A DNA stretch of 63,708 nucleotides, the filler included, from Lenisia limosa (taxonomy: Eukaryota > Protista > Breviatea), in assembly GCA_001655205.1 (NCBI GenBank). It is 17 parts of 17 records of this genome, joined end to end, with 100 filler letters (N's around TTAATTAATTAA, not from the genome) between each part and the next. Parts side by side here need not be neighbours in the genome. Positions count along the whole stretch, not along the records: positions 8,830 to 22,963 come from LPNZ01011663.1; 16 more parts are not named here. One strand, given 5' to 3'. The notes under the pieces are model-generated. The model was not told where the DNA came from. It did no database searches and saw nothing but the letters and a program-made list of their open reading frames with translations. This document shows positions 8,007 through 23,270 of the stretch, piece by piece (positions within the stretch are counted from its first letter, which is position 1; the number at the start of each line of letters is the position of its first letter). Both the position numbers and the translations under genes were made by a program.

Positions 8007-9371
8007 TGACATTTGCTCAGAATTACGCTACGCTCATTTGAAGGGAGGGGAAATGGAAATGGCTTCGTTAAATTATGTTTTTTTTTTATGAATGTTGTTT
8101 TATATACAAGCAGTAATAACATTAAAAATCTGGGACGAATATATCTACTATATATCTATTTATATATCGATATGCATACAAATTCTTAGTTGTGTACATA
8201 GAGTGTATGGGTCCTATACCTAGCATACACTTGTTATCCTCCTGAGTGTAATGGAAATTTTGAAGAAATTTATGACAAAATTTGAAATTAAAGTGTTACA
8301 TTATCTCCCACTTCAAACTATGCAATCCTTCCAAACCTACTAATACCACTTCCGCATCCAAGCTATTAATGCCCCAATAAACCGAAGTAGAACTGTTAAT
8401 AATGTGGATGGATAATGAGGGGGGATACAACACCAAGATCAAGAGAAAAATACCATTCGTCACTTGAGTGGCAGCGAATACTTTTGTGAGAAGTGACCCC
8501 CGCTCTGATTACCAAAAAAATTACATGGGCTTCCTAAGTAAATAAATGGAATCAGCTTTTCATAAGAATCCTAAGTCACTATGCACTTGCAACCCCACGT
8601 TTTGGAGTAGATGATATACAAATTCCCCCACACCCCAAAATAAGAAAGAGAACACATAGAAATTAAATAACTCTGATAATGTAATACGCCTTGTAGTAGG
8701 GAGGCAGATGTGAGGCCTGGGGGGGGGGGNNNNNNNNNNNNNNNNNNNNNNNNNNNNNNNNNNNNNNNNNNNNTTAATTAATTAANNNNNNNNNNNNNNN
8801 NNNNNNNNNNNNNNNNNNNNNNNNNNNNNAACTTTTGAAAATGACTTCAATGTGTAATTTGCTGTTTATTAGGATAAAATTCATACATATTAAGCCAAGT
8901 TATGGCCAGTAACCACGAAAACAGGCCTATTTCATAACTGTCACAATTAATTATAACCGTCACAATTTATGTGCGGCAGCATATGTAATAGAGTATGCTG
9001 CCGCACATAAATTGTGCTTTGTAGGGAAGACAACTTTCAAGTGTTCCTTCCTCTGTCTCCTTCCCTGATATGATATCAATATAATCTAAATTATTAATTA
9101 AGAAGGGCAGAGGCGTATTTTGCCATACCTATGTTTCTCTGGTTTACCTTTCAGACCCCAAATCAGTCCATGGAAAAGATAAATTTTCCAATCGTCTTCT
9201 GATTTCTTACTTCTGGATGTATATAAAACATTACTGAGGCAGTGTTTGGATTATTCTGGGATGATGGAAAATCGGCGAAATAGGGGTCAAAAGGGGGTAT
9301 AAATACTGGTACAACAAGGGGGGTGAACCGGCACTATAATTTTCTTGTTTTCTTGTTCAAAAAGCTGAAAA

Positions 9372-12300
9372 ATGAATAAATATTCTCGTCTTTTTTTGAT
9401 TGGTGAAGGTTGTGTGATTAGTCTTATTGGGCAAGTTTTCAACAGTTTTTAAAGGAATTAATCCTCAAAATGAAGAAGTAGCCCTCAAAGTAATTAAAAT
9501 GGAAGAGATGTCCGACACTGAGAGAAATGAGTGTGTAAAAGAAGTAAGACTTCTTCAAGTATTGGTGTTTTGATTAGCATTGTCCTTATCCCATCCAAAT
9601 ATCTGCAAATGTTATGATTGCTTTGAACAGAACAATGAATTGATAATAGTTTTAGAAATGGCTGGTTTTTTTAAAATGTTGTTATTCAAGAAAAAGGTGA
9701 TTTAGCGTCGTTTCTTATGACATTATTAAAGAAAAAGCAAAGACTATCTGAAATCGCAATTTGGTCTATTTTTTGTCAAATTGTTGAAGGACTCTTTCAT
9801 ATGCATTCATTGAGAGTGATGCATCGTGGTATATTAGAGTTTTTAATGTGATTTAAAGCCAGCAAATATTTTCATTGATGGATCAGGAGCGATTAAACTT
9901 GGTGATCTTGGTTTAGGGCGTCATTTTTCGTTTGATTGTTACTTTAATAGATCTAAAACGCTTCAAGCAACTTCTCTTGTGGGAACACCCTTTTACCTGT
10001 CTCCAGAAAGAATGCAAGTTTGTTGGGGTAGTATTTTTTTTCTTGTTTCTGAAATTTTGTGAGGAATGGCAAGTGGAAGGGGGTACCAGGTTATGTTCTA
10101 AAATCAGGCTTGGTCGAAGGACAAAAAGAACCGTAACCGAGCGTGACTTGAGTGATTTTGATTTAGTTCAAGAAAAGTAATTATTATTGAGAAGTTATAA
10201 TTGTTATACTGACCAAAATCATGTTAAATGTAGTAAAAAAACTAATAAAAAGATGACGGCAAAGTGAGTTTTTGTTCGGATATCGGTGATAATTTTCTTA
10301 TAACCTGCTTTAAGTCCCCAACACTGCGAGGCAACTGTGAGGTACGATTTGACTGCGTTTGCTGCGGGCATCATGCGGTAGTGAGCCACTCACCTTCTGT
10401 GTCTTTCCAGAACGATAAATGCGTTACTGCTGATGAAGCATATACTTGATTTTTTCGTCCATTAGCTTCATTATATTGGCTGAACATGGAAAGTTCTTGA
10501 AAAAAAACCGTCACAAAAGTTACTTCAATTTTTTGAAACCACTGTATTGTCTCCAGAAATGGACTCAGATTCAAATTATCTTTAATAATCCGCGTTTCAA
10601 TTGTGGAACACTTTGATATGCCCGAAATGCTATTATTTTGAAAGAGGGAGTTTTCAAATAATATTTTGGCGTAAAGGAAACTGGGTGACCCGACCCGGTT
10701 CGATTCTGATCAAGCTTCTTACTTGATACTGCTGGAGAGCATGGATTAAGTTACCAATATATGTTTGATTTTGTTGATATTAAATGAATCCACATGTGCC
10801 TTGGTGACAGGTCCAGGCCACTACAAGATAATATAACATATTTTTGAATAATAAACTAACTATTGAGTGGTTTAAAAAAAACTTCCAAAAAAACAAAATT
10901 CACAGAGGTGTGACAGACTGAGCCTGGTTAGCCATTACTCACTCAGCTGTGGCTGGGGTCTCCGAGCACCTAGTGTGACTCNNNNNNNNNNNNNNNNNNN
11001 NNNNNNNNNNNNNNNNNNNNNNNNNNNNNNNNNNNNNNNNNNNNNNNNNNNNNNNNNNNNNNNNNNNNNNNNNNNTCACTATGTGTATTTCAAGGGGAAA
11101 CAAACAATTTGTTTGTTTCCCCTTGATTTCTAATGTTATAATGAATAAAAAAGGAATCAAATACCCTTGTTGTCAACATGGTCACCGCTTTCTTGAAAAT
11201 ACTACATGATTAATTGTAAGCAAGGAGCCTAAAACCCACTCTGACTCCTCCTCCTCGTCAAGCGGTCAAGGTATATAAAGCTGTTCTCTATGGCATTTTC
11301 TTCATAATCTGATGAAATTTCTATGACCGTCAGAGGGGGCCCAAACTTTATAAGTATGGTCGAAATTATAACACATAAGGTTCATATTTTATTGAGTTGA
11401 ATTGGAAAACAACGCTTTTGTGTGTATCTATCATCACCCTTTTCCATCAGGAACCGTTTAAATTGATAGTTATTGAAGTTATTTTGTTACTCCAATAAAT
11501 AAAAAATAGTAATTCGGTAGCACACCCACCCACGAGGTCCAAACTTTCTGGGAGACGACTNNNNNNNNNNTACCCTTTCCCATCAGGAACCGTTTAAATT
11601 GATAGTTATTGAAGTTATTTTGTTACTCCAAAAAATAAAAAATAGTAATTCGGTAGTACACCCAGCCATGAGGTCCAAACTTTCTGGGAAACGACTTGGT
11701 CCTGTAGAAATGCAAAAATTAAATTGATGATCCGAGGATCTAAAAACTTATTTGAATCAAAAAGAAATTGCAAGCTTACTTCTTACAAGGACTATCTTCA
11801 AGATGAGCGCAAAAAAAAATAATGTAAAATTAAAAAAAATCAGCAAAAAGGGGACAATATGTACTATAGTGAAGCTGTGTGCAGAGTTGTCAGGAAAACA
11901 GTTTGGACAGACCCTCCCCCTTTTCTTTTCACTTTTTTTTTCTCTTTTGGATTTATTTGATTCACCATTTTAATTGTTTTTGTTTTTTGTATGAAATTGC
12001 GGNNNNNNNNNNCGAATCAAAAAGAAACTGCAAGCTTACTTCTTACAAGGACTATCTTCAAGATGAGCGCAAAAAAAAAGTAATATTACAAACTTTAATA
12101 AGAGGGGGGGAATGAAAAAAAAAATCAGCAAAAAGGAGAGGAACTGAACTGTGAACTGAACTATTTCCTCAAAAAAATTTTTTTTGATAAAATAGTTTTT
12201 GAGGTGGTCTGCAAAGTTTTTTTATAAAACAAAGGTCAAAATGAGCGTCGGTGGTCCAAAAAAATCATAAGTTACACGGTTTCTGCGCAGCAGCATATAT

Positions 12301-14564
12301 GATATGCTAATAAATAGTTTGATTAGTAAATGTGCAATTATTTTCAATTAATTGGCAATTGCTTCGAAAAAAAAAAATTGCCAGTTGTGGCAATTAATTG
12401 CTAGGTGCCCTAGAAACTCCTTTAAATAAGTTAGATTTAGAAAGAAGTAAGAAAAGAAAAAAAAAAAATCCGGTATTTTTTACATGTGTGTAGGCAAGGC
12501 AGAGTTGAATGGCATGTGGATCATAGCCTCCAAGAGAGAATCCACATTTCTTGATACTCATGCTGATGACATCGCTGGTAACTGAGGAAAATACAGCACG
12601 CATAGTCTTGGCCCTTCAAACTCCCCGAAGAATTTACCCATGACGGTTCTGGTCACTGAAACTCTGTTCTGCTTTTTCCCTGACATCTTCAAGCAACGGG
12701 GATATTTGTCTTGACAGATTTAATCTCTCATCTAAAATTTTTATCAAAGCACTTGAACAAACCTGTCTCCTCACATTTTTAAGCTGACAGGTATATCTCA
12801 ATTACACTCTCCCTCGCGTAAAATTGCAACCTTCGACAGCCATTTCATCAGCTTTTTCTCCATCCAATTCCTCACAAGCCTTCACAATGTNNNNNNNNNN
12901 AACTCTGGCGTTGTTCATTGTCCTTTCGACCTTGTAAATTAGAGTTTACAAAATAAAGGAAATTCGTTAACTACTGTATATACAGCAACATACCTGACAT
13001 TGTCTTTGCCGATTTGTATCCATTGATGATTTTTGAATGGCTTCCTTCAATAAATTATATGCGGTACTCCTTGAAATCTTCATACCGTTTTGTTGTGCTA
13101 ATTGAATGGCAATCTTGTGATCAACATCAAGTCCCTTCTGTAAAATAATTATGGAAAGAGGGTATCTTACCGAGTGCATTTCCTTAATCTTCTTCAGAGT
13201 GCTTGGAATTGCAGCCTTTTCTGTTTTTCGACCAAGGCTCTACGTTGAAAAGGGAGGAATCTAAATTTAAATGATAAGTTACTTTTGCAGTATTTGAGAT
13301 AAGCTCTTTGGAAGGCCTAAGGGTGGATTTGAGGAAGGGTTAATTCAGCTTCCCCACTCTCACAATATCGAAAGTCTGGTATATAATTTGTGAACTGATG
13401 GCTGAAACAGTTTTCTCCCTGTTGGTGAAATAAAAGCATTCACCCTCTTACTTTTGATGCTAGCAGTTTCATTTTTTCGACACTGATTAAGCAGATATGC
13501 CTCCTTGACATCTGTAGGAATATCTTTCCACGTGGCATAACGCCCAACATGCTGATCAAGATGGATCATTTCTGGATGACCTGAGTTCATTTCCGCCGCC
13601 GTAGTTAGGTTTTCAGTTCAACCCTCGGCGAGGTACTTTTTTTTTTTTTTCCCTTCTGTTTTCTCTCCTTTTTTTCTTTTTGTCTCTTCTTTTTCGCCTT
13701 TTCAACAGTATATTTAAGAACATACAAAGGTAATCTGTTTACTAACAACTGCAAGATAATCGTAAAGTGTGTTTGATAATTTTTATGGTAATCACATATA
13801 AATATCATAAGATCGGCTTGTTTTGTTTCAAAATGTATTGAAAATGGCCAAATTTCACANNNNNNNNNNCTATATCGGAAAATTTCACATATTTCTGGAC
13901 GTGATATAGTCACATCTTGTACTAAACCTATATTATATAAGGGTATGATACATTTTAGGGGTTCCCTACGATCCTAAAAAAGACCGAATATCTCGATAAA
14001 TCCTCGATAAATATCGATATTTTAACGGTGTTTTTTGGACCGTAGGGAAGCCCTATATAATATTATATATTTGTTTTTGGTTTTTCAAAACAAATTTATA
14101 TGACATAGTACTACTTTATCTTCTCTTTTTTAAAACAAAGTACATACAATTTTTTAATAGTAAGATTTTCTTTCAGTGGTCCTTTTTTGTTGCAGTCTAT
14201 CTGCAAGTCATGTAAGTTGACTTGTTATAGGAGAAAGGTTATGATTTTAAGAGTGATATTTGGTCATTAGGTTGTATATTATATGAATTAGCAACCTTAC
14301 AGTGAGTTGGCTTTCTCTTTAATGTGATCTCCTTTTTATGAAAAAGGAATCAACTTGTATTCTTTATCTCAAAAAATTCTACATTGTGAGTACCCAAGTT
14401 TACCAGCTCCATATTCAAACGAAGTTTTGTCTATGTCTAACCAGCTTTCATTTCTAATAAAGAGTATGCTCATTATAAAGCCAAGTTCAAGACCGTCAAT
14501 AAATGAAGTGCAAAAAATTTCTCAAAAAATGTTAAAATCGCTTCAAAGTAATGTAAAAATGTAA
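9372..14564 (+). CDS. NEK6/NEK7-like Ser/Thr kinase, complete, 9 exons (9372-9408, 9431-9558, 9583-9664, 9691-9828, 9851-9929, 9951-10017, 14231-14301, 14327-14423, 14445-14564)
   Basis: MNKYSRLFLIGEGKFSTVFKG...VALK...KEVRLLQSLSHPNI...LEMAEKGDL...MHRDLKPANIF...KLGDLGLGRHFS...[41 protein letters not shown]...NLYSL has all catalytic motifs and matches NEK6/7 spacing. Four introns need non-AG acceptors. Confidence 0.93.
10018..14230. mobile_element. Nest of transposon remnants forming NEK intron 6 (4.2 kb)
   Basis: The other seven introns of this gene are 21-26 nt. This one holds a transposase relic, MITEs (e.g. 13957-14056) and a GCAGCAGCA-TA terminus-like motif near 12285-12297. Confidence 0.7.
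12394..13590 (-). pseudogene. Degenerate DNA-transposase relic, possibly Tc1/mariner-pogo-like
   Basis: Long stop-interrupted frame with an HTH-like segment (AIQLAQQNGMKISRSTAYNLLK) and a C-terminal VTSDVISMSIKKCGF resembling the pogo/DDE_1 tail. No DDE triad identified. Confidence 0.45.
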
Positions 14565-14583
14565 CTTTTTCTATCTTTATATA

Positions 14584-15300
14584 TGCTCAGGCGCAGAAAT
14601 CCCGTTGTCTATTCCCCTTTCCTGTTGCTTATTTTTTTTTTTCGAGTTTTTAGCTCAAAGAATGCCACCTCTGTTAACTTCTACATTACGAGCTCGATCT
14701 GCCTAGAGCTCATTGGCATTCGCAATTACCTGGTATATGAGCAAAAAAAAACATGAAGCTAACCTGACCAGGCTGTATCACAGCAACATCTTCACCACCA
14801 TTTAAAACAAAGAATCACACTGGTTTTAAAACTATAACTGAAGCTGCACCAGTCATAGAAACTGACATCACAGCATCACTGATGATTTCACCATGCTCAT
14901 CTGATAATGCTCTAGATATGAGAGGTAACTTGTGTGCAATTGATGAATCCCGTAAATGAACAATAGCCAATGCAGCAGCAGCTCCCTCAAGAAAGTGTTT
15001 TGTTTCAGAATCGAGATCAGAAATTCTAGAATCACACTGGATTGCAGATTTAGCTTGGAGACCTATCGCCTGATCTGGTGCAAGATCCTCTCCTGAATTC
15101 AGAATTTGAACAGACCTTCTGAAATCAACGGTTTTGGAAATCGAAGGCTTATCCATAAAAGTTGATTTGGAAGGCACAGAAAGACACACATTTGGTGCTG
15201 ATAATGGAGCGTTCAGATTGGATTCACTGTATAAAGCTTTGATAAATTGATGAGTAACTTTTGGATATCCTTGTTCTTCAGTTGGTCGATAGACGGAACN
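14584..15300 (-). pseudogene. Copy or allele 1 of an unassigned TIR-element protein (3' half)
   Basis: SVYRPTEEQGYPKVTHQFIKALYSE...HKLPLISRAL...VIVLKPV*FFVLNGGEDVAVIQPGQ/VIANANEL*; near-identical to 15769-16980; left TIR at 14584-14627. Confidence 0.7.
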
Positions 15301-15768
15301 NNNNNNNNNCTCAGAAGAAAGCCCGCCACAATTGAAGCTCACCCTCAAAATCCCCTCCGAGCCCCTCCCAAAGCCCTCCCTTCCCAAACCCTGCCTCCCC
15401 ACACCGCCGTCAAAAATCACCATTCCCCGCATCTCACGAGCCGAGTCCGACTCGCGGTCGAGCCAACGTCGCATCTACCGCACAGGAAACGCAGGTCGGT
15501 TTCCATTGCAAGATTTCTTCCAGCACAGCAGATTTTCGAGTCAATGGGTTACCATCACACGTCATGGGGGCAATATTATCGTTCACATCTCCTGTTTCAT
15601 TAATAATTATCAATTCATATCAGTAACGCATTCGTGAAAGAAATGATGATCGATACACCACTCTGGGAAAAAGATGACATTCCTATTTTGCGGAGACCCA
15701 AGATAATCATAAAAGAGTATATCATCAAACAATATCAACTATTGTACATTATTTCAAATAATAATATA

Positions 15769-17953
15769 TGCTCAGGCGCAGAAATCCCGTTGTTTATTCC
15801 CCTTTCCCGTTGCTTATTTTTTTTTCAAGTTTTTTTTAGCTCATTCTCTGTTTTTGATCGCCCAAATACAGTTTTAGTTAGTTTAAATTACATGCACACA
15901 CTTTTAAACAAAAAATAAACTTTCCTCCTCAAAATAATACCATTTCATCAACACAGTCAACTTGTATCAAGGGTAAATAATAGATATTTACAACAAGTTA
16001 CTTTTTTTCTTTTGTTTTTTCACAAGCTTTGTAAGTGTCGTTGTAGAAGGTGCAAGAATGCCACCTCTGTTAACTTCTACATTACGAGCTCGATCTGCCT
16101 TGAGCTCATTGGCATTCGCAATTACCTGGCATATGAGAAAAAAAAACATGAAGCTAACCTGACCAGGCTGTATCACAGCAACATCTTCACCACCATTTAA
16201 AACAAAGAATCTCACTGGTTTTAAAACTATATCTGAAGCTGCAGTCATAGAAACTGACATCACAGCATCACTGATGACTCCACCATGCTCATCTGATAAT
16301 GCTCTAGATATGAGAGGTAACTTGTGTGCAATTGATGAATCCCGTAAATGAACAATAGCCAATGCAGCAGCAGCTCCCTCAAGAAAGTGTTTTGTTTCAG
16401 AATCGAGATAAGAAATTCTAGAATCACAGTGGATTGCAGATTTAGCTTGGAGACCAATCGCCGATCTGGTGCAAGATCCTCTTCTGAATTCAGAATTTGA
16501 ACAGACCTTCTGAAATCAACGGTTTTGGAAATCGAAGGCTTATCCATAAAAGATGGTTTGGAAGGCACAGAAAGATACACATTTGGTGCTGATAATGGAG
16601 CGTTCAGATTGGATTCACTGTATAAAGTTCTGATAAATTGATGAGTAACTTTTGGATATCCTTGTTCTTCAGTTGGTCGATAGACGGAACCGTTTTGAAA
16701 CTTTTGGATGTTGACTAAGAAAGGATCAAAGCGATCAGGTGTGTAACCACAGTCTTGTTGGGAACTTTGAATAACAGCATATGAAGGGTATTTCAGAGAA
16801 AGAGCAATAATTTCAGCAATTTCCTTCTCAGTGATATCTCTAAAAGGTTAAAAAGTGATAAAAGCCACCAACCTTTTTGAATTTACAGCGAGNNNNNNNN
16901 NNGCATCAGACAGAAGCGGCTTGTTCGTTGGAATGAAGCGTTTTGCTTTGGGTTCAGGCATCTCTAGACGGTTAGTAAAAATACAAAATATGAACCCGTC
17001 GTAAAACAAAACTGAAGTATAAAGAAATACAATATATATGAACAATAAACATCAAACAGTTGGGATTTCGGAGGGTTACCAATTAAATTTCATTCTTGTT
17101 GTTTGCCAATTAAGTAAAGAATCATCTTAGTATCCTCAATAAAAACTTGTATGTGAAATTAAAGCTTAAAAATCAAAAATATATGAGTGTATTAAGTATA
17201 TAAATGAATATATGAATTTTCATGGACACACCGTGGCTTACCGACTCCAAACTTTGCCGCGGATGCCTTGGTCCGGTGAAAAGAGGAAATGTCCCCCTTC
17301 TTTTGAGGGTCTTAAATGCGCTTTATCAAGAAAAGAAACTTAAAGACAACTTGCTGAGATCATAATCTTTAAAACAGTACAACAATAATAAGGTGACAAT
17401 CTCAACTTTATAAAAGGGGGGGTTGAAGAAAAAAAAAAATGGACAAAAGGCAATGAACTGAACTCTAGNNNNNNNNNNCAATACAAAATACGAACACGTC
17501 GTAAAACAAAACTGAAGTATTAAGAAATACAATATATATGAACAATAAACATCAAACAGTTGGGATTTCGGAGGATTACCAATTAAATTTCATTCTTGTT
17601 GTTTGCCAATCAAGTAAAGAATCATCTTAGTATCCTCAATAAAAACTTGTAAGTGAAATTAAAGCTTAAAAATCAAAAATATATGAGTGTATGAAGTATA
17701 CATGGACACACCGTGGCTTACCGACTCCAAACTTTGCCGTGGATGCCTTGGTCCGGTAAAAAGAGAAAATGTCCCCCTTCTTTTGAGGGTCTTAAATGCG
17801 NNNNNNNNNNAAAAAAAAATTTGTTTTTATGAAAAATGTTGAAACTAGTTTTTTACAAAATAGAACTGGAAAAAACACAGAAACTGATGACTAATGACGA
17901 CTTAAAAAAATAGACAACGGGAAAGGGGAATAAACAACGGGATTTCTTGAGCA
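15769..17953 (-). mobile_element. About 2.2-kb TA-flanked TIR element carrying a spliced gene for an unrecognised protein of roughly 300 aa
   Basis: About 40-bp TIRs at 15769-15812 and 17915-17953 (TGCTCA..AGAAATCCCGTTGTTTATTCCCCTTTCCCGTTG, 5-bp indel), with TA outside both. Internal minus-strand ORF with 33-nt GT-AG introns at 16840-16872 and 16126-16158 and one frameshift. Confidence 0.75.
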
Positions 17954-18376
17954 TATGCTTCCGACACTGTGAACATCATTAAAAACCATTGGAAATATGA
18001 AATAATAACAAAATGTAAAATTTCACACAAATTTCAGGAAATTTGGCACTCCAGGCCGGGCGCCCGTGCATATTTCTGCACAAATCAGGACTAAATCTTG
18101 CTACTGTTGTCATTTTGCGATGTTCTTAGATTTGGAATTAANNNNNNNNNNCAGTTCAGTTCAGTTCAAAAATCCGTGAATTGTTTTAAAAAACAACTTT
18201 TGAAAATGACTTCAATGTGTAATTTGCTGTTTATTAGGATAAAATTTATATATTAAGCCAAGTTATGGACCAGTAACCACGGAAACAGGGCTATTTCATA
18301 ACCGTCACAATTAATTATAACCGTCACAATTTATGTGCGGCAGCATATATACTACTAGTATATATATGTGGGTCCT

Positions 18377-19539
18377 CAAAGCTTCGGACATCATTCAAAA
18401 TTCCCGGACACATCAAAACTCCCGGACAGCTTGAAGTTGACACCTTGTATAGGCCATTGCTAGTGTTTTTTGAAAAATATGCTTCGACAGATACATAGAG
18501 AAATGGACCTCCTAATGTTCCCTAACTTTTTTTTCAATTTTGAGCAAATGTCAAAAATCCGTGAATTTGGTCTCCCGGGGGTCTCCCTTTTGCCTTTTCA
18601 TAGAATTGTTTTCTGAATCTTTCTTACCCTCTTTTAGTGTTAAGAAACAAAAATTTGTACCCCTCGGAGTAATTGGTTCCGGGTTCCCATTTGGTTTGGC
18701 TATGTAATGGTGAATTTTGAGGGAAAAATGCTAAAAATAGCACTGTTTACAGGGGTAAAGTTTCCCGGATAGTTGCCATTTATTCCTTGAATGTGGCCTT
18801 TTATAACGGTTTTTGCTTGTTTTTGACCGTTTTTGGACCGTAAATAGAGAGCTTAGGGACTTAATTTGGTTTTGACCCAATAATATGTTAAATTGGGGTT
18901 TCATTATTAGATTAAGATTGAGATTACTTTGAAAAACAGAAGGGAAATAGGGCTTCTGGGTGGTTTATGGTGATTTTGTATGGAAAACTCAAGCTGTCCG
19001 GAATTTTGATGTGTCTGGGAATTTTGAATGATGTCCGGAGCTTTGACTATACATATATAGTCAAAGCTCCATCATTCAAAATCTCCAGACACATCAAAAC
19101 TCCCGGACAGCTTGAATTTTCCCGATAAAAGTACTATAAACTTCATTTTCTTGTTATTTTCGAAAGTAATTTCAGTCATAATCACAGGATTGAATGCGGT
19201 TTTTACATATTCTTGGCTCAAACCCAAATTAAGTCACTTGGCTACCCGTTTGCGGCCCTTAAACTGCCACAAACGACCAAAACCGTTATAATCGGCAAAA
19301 TTGAATGATTAAATGGCAAACTATCCGGGAAAGTTTGACCTTGTAAAAAGCACTATTTTGATCATTTTTCTCTCAAATTTCACCATTACATAGCCAAAGC
19401 AAGAAGGAATCCATAACCAATTACTCCGAGGGGTACAAATTTGTGTTTCTTAACACTAAAAGAGGGATAGATTAAGAAAAAAATCCCGTGAAAAGGCAAG
19501 GGGCCACCCCCGGGAGACCAAATTCACGGATTTTTGACA
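18377..19539. mobile_element. About 1-kb foldback: inverted arms 18549-19050 and 19056-19539, plus a third terminal copy at 18377-18435
   Basis: Matching blocks across the arms, e.g. TGTCAAAAATCCGTGAATTTGGTCTCCCGGG and TTTGTACCCCTCGGAGTAATTGGTT with their reverse complements. Centre is CTTTGACTAT-ACATAT-ATAGTCAAAG; TCCCGGACA sub-repeats. Confidence 0.85.
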
Positions 19540-19619
19540 CTAGTATTGTATTATATGTCACCATATGATATATCAAAATAACAGATTTTATTGTAGACTT
19601 TCCCTCTCATTTATTAGGG

Positions 19620-22600
19620 CTGCATTTACCAGGCGTTGTTGAAGCCCCTCTACCTCAAAGGTATTATCCCACCTACCTGTGGACAGTGCAATGAATGCTT
19701 TGAGAGTTTGATGAAAGCTCAGCAATATCCACGACTTCACGCACTAAGAACGCACCATTTCTATTGCTGCGGGAACTCTCTCGACGTTTCACCCAGATGG
19801 TGTCAAACCGAAACTTCATTCATTAGCTTTTCGAAGACAGACACGACAGGGGCTTGAGTCACTGGCTGATAATTTTGTGAGACTAAAGCAGTCAGAGCTT
19901 TCAGGTTGGATGGGGGGGGGTAATAAGTCATTTACAGGACACTTCTTACGTTTTCAGCGGTTTTCACCCAATGTGCTCCGAAGCAATTGAAGTTCTCTGC
20001 AAGTTTGGAGTTCTTTCAGAGTATCAACTACAGGCTATGTGCCCAACTACATTATCAAGGAAGTTGCATACATTCTTCGACCTGCTGCAGCTCTGTTTCC
20101 TCACTGGGCACCAATCTCTCTACCATTGAAAATGCCTTCAACTCAACAAGGGTGACCGGTAAGCTTTCTTGACTGTCCTAAATCAAGGTTGTTTTGAGTG
20201 TAATTGGGTTTGATTGCATGGGTGATTGTCCGGCTCTCTGTGTCAACGAGTACAAGCCTCCTTCAACTTGCGTTGCCAACAACAATTCGGCAAAGAAAAG
20301 GTCAAAGCCAAAGAAACCAACACAGCCCCCCCCCCCNNNNNNNNNNNNNNNNNNNNNNNNNNNNNNNNNNNNNNNNNNNNNNNNNNNNNNNNNNNNNNNN
20401 NNNNNNNNNNNNNNNNNNNNNNNNNNNNNNNNNNNNNNNNNNNNNNNNNNAAATTAAAGCCCACATTACCCCTCCCTGTCTTACTTCATCATCTCCAAGC
20501 CGGACCCCGATGACCCTTCATGGAGGCGGTTCCCAACTTCTTTAGCAAATCGTTAAAAAACTCAATCTGCCTATCAGTAGCAATTCTTGGGGCTTGAAGG
20601 TCAAAATAATCAGTGAATGGAAACGGATATACTCCATATAATATAGTATTATAGAAATAAAAAATAAGGATTTATACATATCGATATATACTACTAGTTA
20701 ATATAATAGTAGATATCTTTTTTGATATCATATAGTATACTACATTATATGATATGATACAATACAACTATGCATCAAATCTGTATATTATATGATATAT
20801 AATACATATATGATATATATACTATTACACTAAATGTTGAAATACTATTATCAACAAAACAAGATAATGTTGCAATATGTAATGAAGAATAGGTGATCTC
20901 CAAAATATTCAGAAATAGTACGAATAAAGAAGCCGCAACAACTCCAACTGTCCACCTTTCGCCGTGTTTTGGGGGTTATAAAATGATTGGAACAGCGATA
21001 TGCTAAAATCTTCAAAGCCCCTGTCATCTGCCTTCCCCTCTAAGAGAACTACACTGTCAACCAAGAAGACTCAGACGCAGGGTGTTCAATAAGGTATTTA
21101 AGTCATCATAGTCAACCATCCCATTCCCATCTTCTTCCTGGGAGATGGAATTTTTAATCGCTACATCACCAAATGCGTCTGAATAAACTAGTAGAAAAAA
21201 ACCCGTGTACTGATGATGAATTGTGTTTCCAAAGTGCCACATGGTATGGAAAATTCCAAGGCCAGCCTTGACATTATTTTAAAAAAAAAACCTTCGTCTG
21301 TTGAGCGTTCTCCCCTCTGAATGATTTCGTGCTCGCCTCCGTCTGGACTGATACCACATCACCTATGCGCATGGGGCACGAACCAAGGGCTAATATTGAT
21401 TCCATTAACTCTGATATGGTGTGATTGATGGCACCTAAAGGGGTTATACAAACAAGATCAATTCGAGAAATGATCACCACAAAAACGAACCATTGAGGGT
21501 CCCCTCATTCTCCCTAATCAACTTTTGAAGCCGGATTACTGATAGCTTGGAGCCTTCAACGTTGAAGTACTTGTCAAAGAAATCAGTACCAGTCAACCAG
21601 ACCTTTTGATAACCCGAAACTTGCATATTCCTTTGGAGCAACCCTCTTCAAATCGTCTCGAATGAGATCGATCACTCTTCTCCCGTAATCAGCACAACTG
21701 TGAAAATAAGTCACAACTGTGAAAAAAGAACAATCATCAGCAGCAAACCAGTCCAAGGTCGGGAACACGGCATCCAGAGTCACACCCTCCGTCAGAACCT
21801 TCTGATCTGTTTTGGGCATTGACTCATGATTGGGAATTGGGTCGATACCAAATAAAAATATATTTGTAAAATTCTCCTAGAACATCAAACAAATGTTATT
21901 TCTTACATTGCAAAACCTGACGTTGTCATAATAAAGGCCGCTGTCAACCCTTCCAGAGTCTTTAACACGTTTTGTCAACATTGTCAACCGAGATTATACA
22001 AGTGAATCTACAGCCTATGATGATGATGCTAATAAAAAACAAATGCCTACGGTGCTCGAAACTCCTTTCGACTGCAAATATTTTGTGAATGCAAAATTAA
22101 TCTTAAATGTTACTCATTTCATAAAAAGTACGCATACCAAGCTGAAACGTTAGTGGTTCCTTGCCCGAATTGAAGAAATAAACGAAAACCAATGAATTGG
22201 TGTAAAACTTTCTTTCTTTCTAATCAGGGCCAGTTCGTACCTCTGGAGAAAGTATGGCATACATTCAGTGGCTGCTGTGTTTGCCTCTTTTAGTGACGAA
22301 GACTTCAACAAACCAATAACCTTTTCTGACTCAATCAGACAAAATTGCTTCAGATCCTTTGAGGATCAATGACTTGTCTCATCTGTTGTGCTCAATTTAG
22401 TATTACCCTACAATGAGACATTGACAGTCTCAAACGCTCCGCTTATTTATATTCATACACCAATCTTACCATCACATTCTGGACTTCGTGGCTGAATATC
22501 TGCTTCCCATCCAGAGTGCGATGCTTGATCGAGGAATCTTGAAAGAGAAGGAACTGTCGGAGTCCATATGGAGAAATGCTGCTATTTTAGGCTGTTCTGA

Positions 22601-22870
22601 GTCAGCATCTGAAGCTAAGTACGCCTCAATTGCCTTCTTGAGGTAAATGTTCTTTTCTCTAGACGTAAGGATGGGCTCATTTTTATCTTTGTCAACACCA
22701 GCCCAGGCATTCTCAAGCTCAGGAAAATCTGTAGTGAAGTAGCTTTCTACAGGTTTGCGCCCGCGGGAGACCATAATAATAGTTCCAAAAACTAAAAATG
22801 ATGAAGGCACCAACAAAGGGATCTTACATTGGGAGAAAAGGGCACTGAAACAAAACGGTTTTTCCAAGAG
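19620..22870. pseudogene. Degenerate, apparently intron-poor coding relics (probable transposon or viral remnant)
   Basis: Several 60-130-aa frames broken by stops and frameshifts (minus strand about 21050-22870; Cys-rich plus strand 19636-20330). No family confidently recognised. Confidence 0.3.
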
Positions 22871-23270
22871 AAGGTTTTTCCAATTCCAAGTGAGGTTAAT
22901 ACGTATAGGTGGGGGGACATGACCGTGTCCAGGGACATGACCGTGTCCACTTTTTTTTATTTTNNNNNNNNNNNNNNNNNNNNNNNNNNNNNNNNNNNNN
23001 NNNNNNNTTAATTAATTAANNNNNNNNNNNNNNNNNNNNNNNNNNNNNNNNNNNNNNNNNNNNGGGTGTTAACTACTAAAAAAAAACAAAAGAAATAGAA
23101 GAAACTTAACTTGTAAGCGCTTCCTAATTAAACAACAAATTCACATTAAGAGTGGCTCTGTTTCCCAATTTTATTTGCTGTCATGATAAAAAAAAATAAA
23201 ATAAGGCTGTATCTGGCCGAAGCCGTCCATCACGCTGATAGAGATATTGGATTAATTAATTTTAACTCAC

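What the first reader, a model, noticed from the sequence alone, without database searches (positions are those of the whole stretch)
9409..14326. Intact NEK kinase whose micro-introns use non-AG 3' splice sites (three GT-TG, one GT-GG)
Seen: introns are 9409-9430 (22 nt, GT..TTGG), 9559-9582 (24, GT..ATTG), 9665-9690 (26, AG), 9829-9850 (22, GT..ATGTG), 9930-9950 (21, AG), 14302-14326 (25, GT..ATGTG) and 14424-14444 (21, AG). Removing exactly these gives IGEGKFSTV, LLQSLSHPN, MHRDLKPAN and LQSPFY with correct NEK6/7 spacing and no stop or frameshift. For the three TG introns the nearby AG alternatives I tried give frameshifts or stops. For intron 1, AG solutions exist but break the Gly-rich loop. 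Two TG introns share TTAATGTG. Known: tiny introns in ciliates and chlorarachniophyte nucleomorphs are GT-AG, and GT-TG is normally a rare exception. Inference: four acceptor changes with no coding damage argue against decay and for 3' site selection by distance from the donor or branch point.
Basis: partly seen in the sequence, partly recalled or inferred. Interest (0 to 1): 0.88.

Follow-up and report, generated by a model that had tools for sequence, protein, structure and literature searches.

The report
Tiny introns spliced without AG
A NEK6/7-type kinase gene in a small, repeat-rich eukaryotic genome has 21-26 base introns, and RNA data show that four of them are cut out precisely although they end in TG or GG instead of the near-universal AG, so this organism's splicing machinery does not need the AG at least at these sites.

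Summary
All seven tiny introns are at the stated coordinates. Contigs of a poly(A) RNA run of the same organism match the exons with no mismatch and lack exactly 22, 24, 26, 22, 25 and 21 bases at six of the seven sites. These six include all four non-AG introns (GT..GG at 9409-9430; GT..TG at 9559-9582, 9829-9850 and 14302-14326). No allowed shift of any of these deletions gives an AG end. DNA contigs show only the unspliced form and the same TG/GG bases, so removal happens at the RNA level. Two of the TG introns sit at the same position and phase as canonical NEK7 introns of a brachiopod (Lingula), one of them also of a jellyfish (Rhopilema), so they are old spliceosomal introns that lost the A of AG. 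All seven keep GT at the start and G at the end.

Not shown:
- The join across the 4.2 kb intron (10018-14230). It holds all five assembly gaps, and one RNA contig runs unspliced through its acceptor.
- The genome-wide frequency of such introns.
- The site-selection mechanism.
- The organism.

I found no report of this in the literature I searched. I rate it a new variant of U2-type splicing, of high interest.

The parts
9372..9408 (+). NEK exon 1 (ATG at 9372; MNKYSRLFLIGE + first base of the G13 codon)
   Evidence: Translation. RNA contig covers it from 9378.
9409..9430 (+). Tiny intron 1: 22 nt, GT..GG, phase 1, inside the Gly-rich loop
   Evidence: Sequence. 22 nt absent from an RNA contig with 0 mismatches. 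Possible shifts give only GG..TG or TT..GG, never AG. The AG 5 nt downstream is not used.
9431..9558 (+). NEK exon 2
9559..9582 (+). Tiny intron 2: 24 nt, GT..TG, phase 0. Same position and phase as a Lingula NEK7 intron (LLK|QLNHPN).
   Evidence: Sequence. 24 nt absent from RNA with no boundary ambiguity. Position conserved. The internal TAG at intron bases 17-19 is skipped.
9583..9664 (+). NEK exon 3
9665..9690 (+). Tiny intron 3: 26 nt, GT..AG, phase 1
   Evidence: 26 nt left out.
9691..9828 (+). NEK exon 4 (ends in MHR + first base of the D codon of HRD)
9829..9850 (+). Tiny intron 4: 22 nt, GT..TG (or GT..AT if shifted 3 nt left), phase 1 in the HRD Asp codon. Same position and phase as introns of Lingula, Rhopilema and Nematostella NEK7.
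   Evidence: Sequence. 22 nt absent from RNA. Position conserved.
9851..9929 (+). NEK exon 5 (RNA cover only to 9902)
9930..9950 (+). Tiny intron 5: 21 nt, GT..AG, phase 2. No RNA evidence.
   Evidence: Sequence and homology only.
9951..10017 (+). NEK exon 6 (…[15 protein letters not shown]). No RNA contig.
   Evidence: The share of words held by X2 is fully explained by the two RNA contigs covering 9378-9902.
10018..14230 (+). Long intron, GT..AG with a pyrimidine tract, phase 0. It holds all five assembly gaps, transposon-like genes and a very high-copy inverted-repeat element. The join is inferred, not seen in RNA.
   Evidence: Homology is collinear across the join ([14 protein letters not shown]). 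DNA contigs show at least 660 nt after exon 6 and 206 nt before exon 7. An RNA contig reads through 14183-14301 unspliced.
14231..14301 (+). NEK exon 7
14302..14326 (+). Tiny intron 6: 25 nt, GTGAGT..TG, phase 2
   Evidence: Sequence. 25 nt absent from an RNA contig of depth 27, with no boundary ambiguity.
14327..14423 (+). NEK exon 8
14424..14444 (+). Tiny intron 7: 21 nt, GT..AG, phase 0. Position conserved in Lingula, Rhopilema and Nematostella.
14445..14564 (+). NEK exon 9 with stop codon TAA at 14562-14564
   Evidence: RNA cover to 14517.

Best explanation
These are genuine U2-type spliceosomal introns of the ultra-short class (21-26 nt), in a NEK6/7-like kinase gene of a fast-evolving, repeat-rich eukaryote. 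In four of them the 3' end is TG or GG, not AG, yet they are removed precisely from poly(A) RNA and the kinase reading frame is restored.

Shown here:
- Precise removal at the RNA level.
- No deleted form in DNA.
- GT at every 5' end and G at every 3' end.
- Two of the TG introns are at ancestral intron positions.
- Nearby AGs are ignored: one 5 nt downstream of intron 1, and internal TAGs in introns 1, 2 and 4.

Inferred: in such short introns the branch point lies only about 3-6 nt from the 3' end. A yUnAy-like A is found there in most of the seven, and the pattern A-N-N-N-G| occurs in five. Geometry would then leave essentially one phosphate that can dock for exon ligation. The terminal G can still pair with the 5' G(+1), the G1/G-1 contact known from C*/P spliceosome structures and from AT-AC covariation. 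The A(-2) contact with the branch adenosine would have become dispensable. The one long intron of the gene keeps a normal pyrimidine tract and AG.
For:: RNA contigs with 0 mismatches lack exactly 22, 24, 26, 22, 25 and 21 nt at the predicted sites. DNA contigs at single-copy depth (about 42 and 33) are identical to the window across both exon blocks and show no deletion and no variant base at the acceptors; the intron sequences; each retained non-AG intron brings an early stop, and AG alternatives change the protein (most delete conserved motifs); introns 2, 4 and 7 share alignment column and phase with canonical GT-AG introns of Lingula, and introns 4 and 7 also with Rhopilema; the spliced product is a complete kinase domain with GxGxxS, VAIK-type Lys, HRDLKPAN and DLG motifs, and its named best hits are mostly NEK6/7. 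Literature: short-intron lineages have very degenerate splice signals (PMC2483917). Ultra-short introns of dicyemids and myxobolids were logo-analysed from curated genome annotations and described with an AG 3' end (PMC13644364). TopHat provided the intron evidence for the Dicyema gene models (PMC6736024). From my own knowledge, TopHat and standard gene predictors report or model essentially only canonical junctions.
Against: This is one gene only. The RNA evidence is assembled contigs (Logan), not single reads, at modest depth (5.5-27). The DNA run may be the one the assembly was built from, so the TG/GG bases are not independently confirmed. No lariat or branch-point data exist, and the branch-point assignment rests on seven short sequences. 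The full-length mRNA is not shown: exon 6 has no RNA contig, and the contig over exon 7 continues 48 nt upstream into the long intron. The first-stage reader picked this gene for its oddity, so 4 of 7 cannot be extrapolated to the genome.
Confidence: 0.85

Rival explanations
1. The RNA comes from another copy of the gene (a paralogue, second haplotype or retrocopy) that has normal AG introns or none. Under this reading the copy in the window is a decaying one.
For: The genome is repeat-rich and assembled with gaps. Contigs drop rare variants (tool note).
Against: RNA matches the window exons with 0 mismatches over 736 nt. DNA depth over both exon blocks is single-copy-like (42 and 33.5), with no variant letters and no intron-less DNA form. 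The window copy has no stop or frameshift once the segments are removed.
Confidence: 0.04
2. The segments are removed from DNA in somatic nuclei, like ciliate internal eliminated sequences or dicyemid chromatin elimination. The RNA would then simply reflect rearranged DNA.
For: The segments are short, and two of them (introns 1 and 4) have 1-3 nt repeats at their edges. DNA elimination is described for dicyemids (my own knowledge), which are one candidate organism.
Against: The DNA run shows only the unexcised form at full depth and no 21-26 nt deletion (table 4). All segments start with GT. They have the same size class as the AG introns of the same gene. Two sit at ancestral intron positions and phases.
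Confidence: 0.03
3. The deletions are artefacts of reverse transcription (template switching at short repeats) or of contig assembly, or come from a non-spliceosomal cut-and-ligate pathway (IRE1/tRNA-ligase type, as for the 26-nt XBP1 intron).
For: Non-canonical 'introns' in cDNA data are often template-switch artefacts. Intron 4 has a 3-nt GTG repeat at its borders.
Against: Introns 2 and 6 have no repeat at all. The deleted form is the only one assembled at six sites. Every deletion restores a conserved kinase frame. The junctions (AAG|GTT, CAA|GTA, GTG|GTA, ACA|GTG) do not fit the IRE1 loop consensus CNG|CNGN, by direct reading. Four such events in one kinase gene next to three ordinary GT-AG introns of equal size fit the spliceosome far better.
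Confidence: 0.03
4. The gene is a recently broken pseudogene. A transposon-filled 4.2 kb insertion split it. The two halves are still transcribed and their tiny introns still spliced, but no full-length kinase is made.
For: No RNA contig joins exon 6 to exon 7. The 3' contig reads through the proposed acceptor and holds an in-frame TAG at 14228-14230. Depth is 27 for the 3' block against 5.5-7.3 for the 5' block. The intron is full of repeats and expressed transposon-like ORFs.
Against: Both halves are free of stops and frameshifts and join without gain or loss of a residue relative to NEK7. The long intron has a good GT donor and a pyrimidine tract followed by AG. 3' bias and retained long introns are common in poly(A) libraries. 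This rival does not touch the main point, since the non-AG introns are spliced in either case.
Confidence: 0.2

Closest known systems
Ultra-short U2-type introns of dicyemids (Dicyema), myxobolid myxozoans, Paramecium, Stentor and the Bigelowiella nucleomorph
   Same: Same size class (21-26 nt here; Dicyema acuticephalum mean 24.9-26.2 nt, PMC2483917 and PMC2222250; myxobolid medians 22-27 nt, PMC13644364). GT(A/T)-type minimal donor, no pyrimidine tract, weakly conserved A residues near the 3' end, high intron density, and some positions shared with other animals.
   Different: All of these are described as ending in AG (for dicyemids and myxozoans PMC13644364; for the ciliates and the nucleomorph from my own knowledge). 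Here 4 of 7 in one gene end in TG or GG with RNA support. The published animal sets were taken from genome annotations whose tools, to my knowledge, model only canonical ends, so such introns could have been missed.
Rare GT-TG introns / TG alternative 3' splice sites in human U2-dependent introns
   Same: Same end dinucleotides (GT..TG). The terminal G is retained and A(-2) is replaced by U.
   Different: In humans they are very rare, usually alternative sites close to a normal AG, in long introns with normal branch site and pyrimidine tract (my own knowledge; GT-TG is listed among rare classes in PMC1557818 and PMC4176328). Here they are constitutive as far as the contigs show, with three TG and one GG end in one gene, in introns of 22-25 nt.
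Lineage-wide non-canonical splicing in Fritillaria borealis / Oikopleura, and euglenid non-conventional introns
   Same: Lineages in which the GT-AG rule is broadly relaxed.
   Different: In those cases the 5' end is also non-canonical, or the intron ends pair with each other, and the introns are not of the about-22-nt class (my own knowledge; not tested here). Here the donor GT and the last G are kept, and only position -2 varies.
NEK6/NEK7 protein kinases
   Same: Complete kinase domain collinear with NEK7 (IGxGxFS, HRDxKPAN, DLGLGRxFSSKT, SPE, LQSPFY). Named best hits are mostly NEK6/7 at 50-58% identity.
   Different: Very long branch. Lacks the N-terminal extension of about 20-30 residues seen in the orthologues; an upstream exon cannot be excluded.

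Membership tests
U2-type (major) spliceosomal intron | GT (or GC) at the 5' end | tested here: met
   All seven tiny introns and the long intron start with GT.
U2-type (major) spliceosomal intron | AG at the 3' end | tested here: not met
   Introns 1, 2, 4 and 6 end in GG, TG, TG and TG. No permitted shift of the RNA-defined deletions gives AG. Introns 3, 5 and 7 and the long intron end in AG.
U2-type (major) spliceosomal intron | Precise removal from mature poly(A) RNA but presence in DNA | tested here: met
   RNA contigs lack the segments. DNA contigs keep them. Not tested for intron 5 or the long intron.
U2-type (major) spliceosomal intron | Homology of position and phase with introns of orthologous genes | tested here: met
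   Introns 2 (TG), 4 (TG) and 7 (AG) share alignment column and phase with Lingula NEK7 introns, and 4 and 7 also with Rhopilema and Nematostella. Introns 1, 3, 5 and 6 and the long intron have no counterpart in those three species.
U2-type (major) spliceosomal intron | Branch-point adenosine and lariat formation | not testable with these tools
   Candidate yUnAy-like A residues lie 3-6 nt from the 3' end (reading). No lariat reads are available.
U12-type (minor) intron | 5' consensus (A/G)TATCCTT and branch site TCCTTAAC | tested here: not met
   The donors are GTTGTG, GTATTG, GTATAT and GTGAGT, and no TCCTTAAC is present.
IRE1/tRNA-ligase unconventional intron (XBP1/HAC1 type) | Cleavage in paired 7-nt loops with consensus CNG|CNGN at both junctions | tested here: not met
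   The junction sequences do not fit the consensus (direct reading). Stem-loops were not folded.
DNA-level eliminated sequence (IES-like) | Excised form present in DNA | tested here: not met
   The DNA run shows no 21-26 nt deletion at these sites. Contigs can miss rare forms.
NEK6/NEK7 kinase subfamily | Protein kinase domain with catalytic motifs, and NEK6/7 as best matches | tested here: met
   Pkinase E 1.9e-67 over residues 6-257. Named hits are mostly NEK6/7. Motifs are aligned.
NEK6/NEK7 kinase subfamily | Orthology shown by phylogeny | tested here: inconclusive
   end branch of 4.28 changes per column, joined to the breviate Pygsuia under a long-branch warning. No other NEK subfamilies were included in the tree.

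The most novel reading that the evidence does not exclude
In this lineage the AG rule is relaxed to 'any base + G' for ultra-short introns genome-wide. A sizeable share of its introns would be GT..NG, chosen by a fixed short spacing from the branch site. Published gene sets built with GT-AG-only tools would have missed or mis-modelled many genes, and this would be the first eukaryote in which the 3' A(-2) contact of the spliceosome is dispensable as a rule.
Probability: 0.4. Interest if true: 0.92.

Novelty: new variant of a known kind. Interest (0 to 1): 0.82.

Why it matters
The 3' AG is among the most invariant signals in eukaryotic gene expression. It is read twice, by U2AF35 early and by the catalytic core at exon ligation. 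A natural system in which ordinary, ancestrally positioned introns splice with TG or GG ends would show how far exon ligation can rely on geometry plus the terminal G alone. It would also make the question of how 20-25 nt introns are recognised directly testable.

There is a practical consequence as well. Annotation pipelines that accept only GT/GC-AG junctions would break genes like this one. No protein matching this gene was found in the 5.8-billion-protein collection. Gene counts and 'gene losses' reported for ultra-short-intron parasites could therefore be partly artefacts.

Tried and rejected
- First read laying at 90% likeness laid no RNA on the exons, because the 21-26 nt gaps pushed likeness below 90. 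It was repeated at 80%.
- I looked for the gene's own protein or the RNA-contig peptides in the protein collection and found none.
- I looked for a second conserved gene in the piece to test generality. There were no Pfam hits for 18 ORFs, no PDB or Atlas lead for the 160-aa ORF, and no Rfam or tRNA hit.
- That ORF turned out to be a multi-copy element gene. Its relatives are read as uninterrupted ORFs, and the window copy has a TGA where the relatives have Arg, so it gave no intron information.
- ORF-joining on the minus-strand gene at 20850-22900 was judged too speculative without homologues.
- Organism identification failed. The best NEK hit is the breviate Pygsuia (GCRY = Pygsuia biforma), but on a long branch. 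The Lenisia paper and Ogino et al. 2010 are not held.
- Literature searches found no report of non-AG acceptors in dicyemids, myxozoans or other tiny-intron lineages.
- Rejected explanations: U12-type, IRE1-type, DNA elimination, template-switch artefact (see rivals and membership test).


Full report
**What is in the sequence.** The piece (8830-22963) is AT-rich (GC about 0.30-0.45) and full of repeats and short assembly gaps.
- 9409-9430: GTTGTG..TTGG, 22 nt
- 9559-9582: GTATTG..ATTG, 24 nt
- 9665-9690: ..CAAG, 26 nt
- 9829-9850: GTATAT..TGTG, 22 nt
- 9930-9950: ..ATAG, 21 nt
- 14302-14326: GTGAGT..TGTG, 25 nt
- 14424-14444: ..CCAG, 21 nt

With all eight out, the CDS is 819 nt (9372-14564) and gives 272 residues without a stop. 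The product is a full protein-kinase domain (Pfam Pkinase E 1.9e-67). Its named best matches are mostly NEK6/NEK7 at 50-58% identity. It aligns without indels through the Gly loop, HRDLKPAN, DLGLGRHFSSKT, SPE and LQSPFY.

**Assembly gaps.** All five gaps named by the scan's program lie inside the long intron, and no exon touches a gap.
- A DNA contig bridges 13860-13869, leaving out 11 letters, so that gap is spurious.
- The gaps at 11561-11570 and 12003-12012 are flanked by 125-nt and about 66-100-nt near-identical copies. This is the signature of unresolved repeats, so the intron's true length is uncertain.
- DNA contigs run on for at least 660 nt after exon 6 and 206 nt before exon 7, so a long intron is real.

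**RNA evidence.** Two public runs of the same coded organism hold the locus: a DNA-like run X1 and a poly(A) 'metatranscriptomic' RNA run X2. X2 holds 0.44 of the sampled words of 9372-10017, which is what two exon-only contigs covering 9378-9902 should give. At 90% likeness nothing was laid on the exons. At 80% three RNA contigs appeared, each with zero mismatches:
- 205 nt over 9378-9628, lacking 22 nt at 9408 and 24 nt at 9559
- 242 nt over 9613-9902, lacking 26 nt at 9664 and 22 nt at 9826
- 289 nt over 14183-14517, lacking 25 nt at 14302 and 21 nt at 14424

The places are left-aligned. Introns 2 and 6 have no ambiguity at all. For intron 1 the possible readings are GG..TG, GT..GG or TT..GG. 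For intron 4 they are GT..AT, TG..TG, GG..GT or GT..TG. None ends in AG.

The only subtle AG alternative is a 22-nt GT..AG at 9414-9435 that would give IGEGCFSTV. It would put mismatches into the contig and is therefore excluded. Intron 5 and the long intron have no RNA evidence.

**RNA-level, not DNA-level.** X1 contigs cover 9200-10679 (depth 42) and 14025-14607 (depth 33.5) with no difference from the window. They show no variant letter at the acceptors and no 21-26 nt deletion. This confirms the TG/GG bases, although perhaps from the same reads as the assembly. It also argues against a second copy with AG ends and against DNA elimination.

**They are old spliceosomal introns.** I mapped the exon structure of NEK7 in Lingula, Rhopilema and Nematostella from their genomic loci and projected it on the alignment.
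- Intron 2 (TG) shares column and phase 0 with a Lingula intron (LLK|QLNHPN).
- Intron 4 (TG) shares column and phase 1, in the Asp codon of HRD, with introns of all three species.
- Intron 7 (AG) shares column and phase 0 with all three.

The other introns are lineage-specific or shifted. So at least two of the non-AG introns descend from ordinary GT-AG introns.

**Consequences of not splicing.** Retention of any of the four non-AG introns brings a stop within a few codons of the retained intron. In-frame, stop-free GY..AG alternatives exist (37, 4, 8 and 1 for the four introns). All change the protein: they remove or disrupt the Gly loop, or delete helix C/SLSHPN, the HRD/KPAN motif or the [15 protein letters not shown] block.

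**How it probably works (inference).** All seven tiny introns keep GT at the start and G at the end; only position -2 varies (A, T or G). AGs that are too close to the donor (internal TAGs in introns 1, 2 and 4) are ignored. So is the AG 5 nt past the GG end of intron 1, which would give a 27-nt intron. The site is therefore not 'the first AG'.

Most introns have a yUnAy-like A 3-6 nt from the end:
- cttAttgg| (intron 1)
- tttaAtgtg| (introns 4 and 6)
- tttaAtag| (intron 5)
- tctaAccag| (intron 7)

The two TG introns that share TTAATGTG match the AG intron's TTAATAG. A branch site this close to the junction would leave one reachable phosphate for exon ligation. The terminal G can still make the known contact with the 5' G(+1), while the A(-2)/branch-A contact would be dispensable. 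This rests on established knowledge of C*/P-complex structures and of G1/G-1 covariation, plus seven sequences. It was not tested.

**What is not shown.** No RNA contig covers 9903-10017 or joins 10017 to 14231. The 3' contig starts at 14183, runs unbroken through the proposed acceptor and contains an in-frame TAG at 14228-14230. Its depth is 27, against 5.5-7.3 for the 5' contigs. This could be 3' bias plus a slowly removed long intron, or an internal start in the repeat-filled intron, or a gene recently split by insertions. It does not affect the finding that the non-AG introns are spliced, but 'intact' is an inference from collinearity.

**Organism.** It was not identified. The NEK sits on a very long branch next to the breviate Pygsuia, with a long-branch warning. 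The DNA also exists as an ENA metagenome-style assembly, ERZ3820729. Intron size, GC, repeat load and gap rate fit Dicyema japonicum (GC 36.7%, 49% repeats, PMC6736024; Dicyema acuticephalum introns 24.9 ± 2.5 nt, PMC2483917). Myxobolid myxozoans also have 22-27 nt introns (PMC13644364).

**Comparison with what is known.** Ultra-short introns are known in dicyemids, myxobolids, ciliates and a nucleomorph. Their signals are known to be degenerate (PMC2483917). For dicyemids and myxozoans the 3' end is reported as AG, from logos drawn on curated genome annotations (PMC13644364); for the ciliates and the nucleomorph the AG ends are from my own knowledge. TopHat supplied the intron evidence for the Dicyema models (PMC6736024). 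From my own knowledge, TopHat and the standard gene predictors handle essentially only canonical junctions. GT-TG is listed as a rare class in model organisms (PMC1557818, PMC4176328). Ten literature searches found no report of non-AG acceptors in any tiny-intron lineage.

**Generality.** I could not test it. No other recognisable conserved gene lies in the piece or in six further contigs of the same assembly, and both read-laying runs were used. Because the gene was picked for its oddity, 4 of 7 is not an estimate of the genome-wide rate.

**Verdict.** It is a new variant of U2-type splicing and of high interest.

Noticed in passing
window 13976-14055: An inverted-repeat element of about 80 nt (taggggttccctacgatcc … ggaccgtagggaagcccta) has summed DNA word depth of about 94,000, against about 42 for single-copy sequence, with many rearranged joints. 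It is an extremely abundant MITE-like or foldback repeat, and RNA contigs also touch it.
   Followed up: partly
window 12901-13640, minus strand: A transposon-like gene with helix-turn-helix-like segments (…GRKTEKAAIPSTLKKIKEMHS|KGLDVDHKIAIQLAQQNGMKISRSTAYNLLKE…). An RNA contig from a related copy (5 mismatches) skips 33 nt at 13138-13170, a canonical GTAAGA…TTTTACAG intron on the minus strand. Slightly longer introns in the same genome therefore keep the pyrimidine tract and AG. A 390-nt RNA contig covers 13444-13831.
   Followed up: partly
window 14658-15299 and 16054-16690, minus strand: Two 97-98% identical copies of a gene with no Pfam match. Relatives at 54-100% identity sit on six contigs of the ENA assembly ERZ3820729, with coverage from 31 to 747, so it is a multi-copy element gene. 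The window copy has TGA where the relatives have Arg (…LKPV*FFVL versus …LKPVRFFVL), which points to a decayed copy.
   Followed up: partly
window 11436-11696 and 11754-12113: The 10-N gaps at 11561 and 12003 are flanked by near-identical sequence on both sides (125 nt at 95%; 66 nt at 98%). This looks like unresolved tandem or haplotype overlap rather than missing sequence.
   Followed up: yes
window 8906-8990 / 18270-18354, and 18363-19471: The sequence just upstream of the NEK gene is repeated 9.4 kb downstream (94%) and includes a short palindrome (tgtgcggcagcatat…atgctgccgcaca) near 8970-9010. At 18363-19471 lie nested inverted repeats (60-nt and 153-nt arms), a foldback-type element.
   Followed up: no
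window 14579-14651 and 15764-15836 (inverted near 17905-17960): A repeat end (ATATATGCTCAGGCGCAGAAATCCCGTTGT…poly-T) begins only 15 nt after the NEK stop codon, so the gene's 3' UTR runs straight into a mobile-element terminus.
   Followed up: no
window 10295 / 13977: One DNA contig (depth 38) joins 10295 directly to 13977, skipping 3681 nt. Only 27 letters lie on the shorter side, which is in the high-copy repeat. It is either an alternative haplotype without most of the long intron's insertions or a repeat-induced join.
   Followed up: no
window 9930-9950 and 14424-14444: The two 21-nt AG introns are multiples of three without in-frame stops, so their retention would add 7 residues instead of ending the frame. 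The 24-nt TG intron is also a multiple of three but carries an in-frame stop.
   Followed up: no
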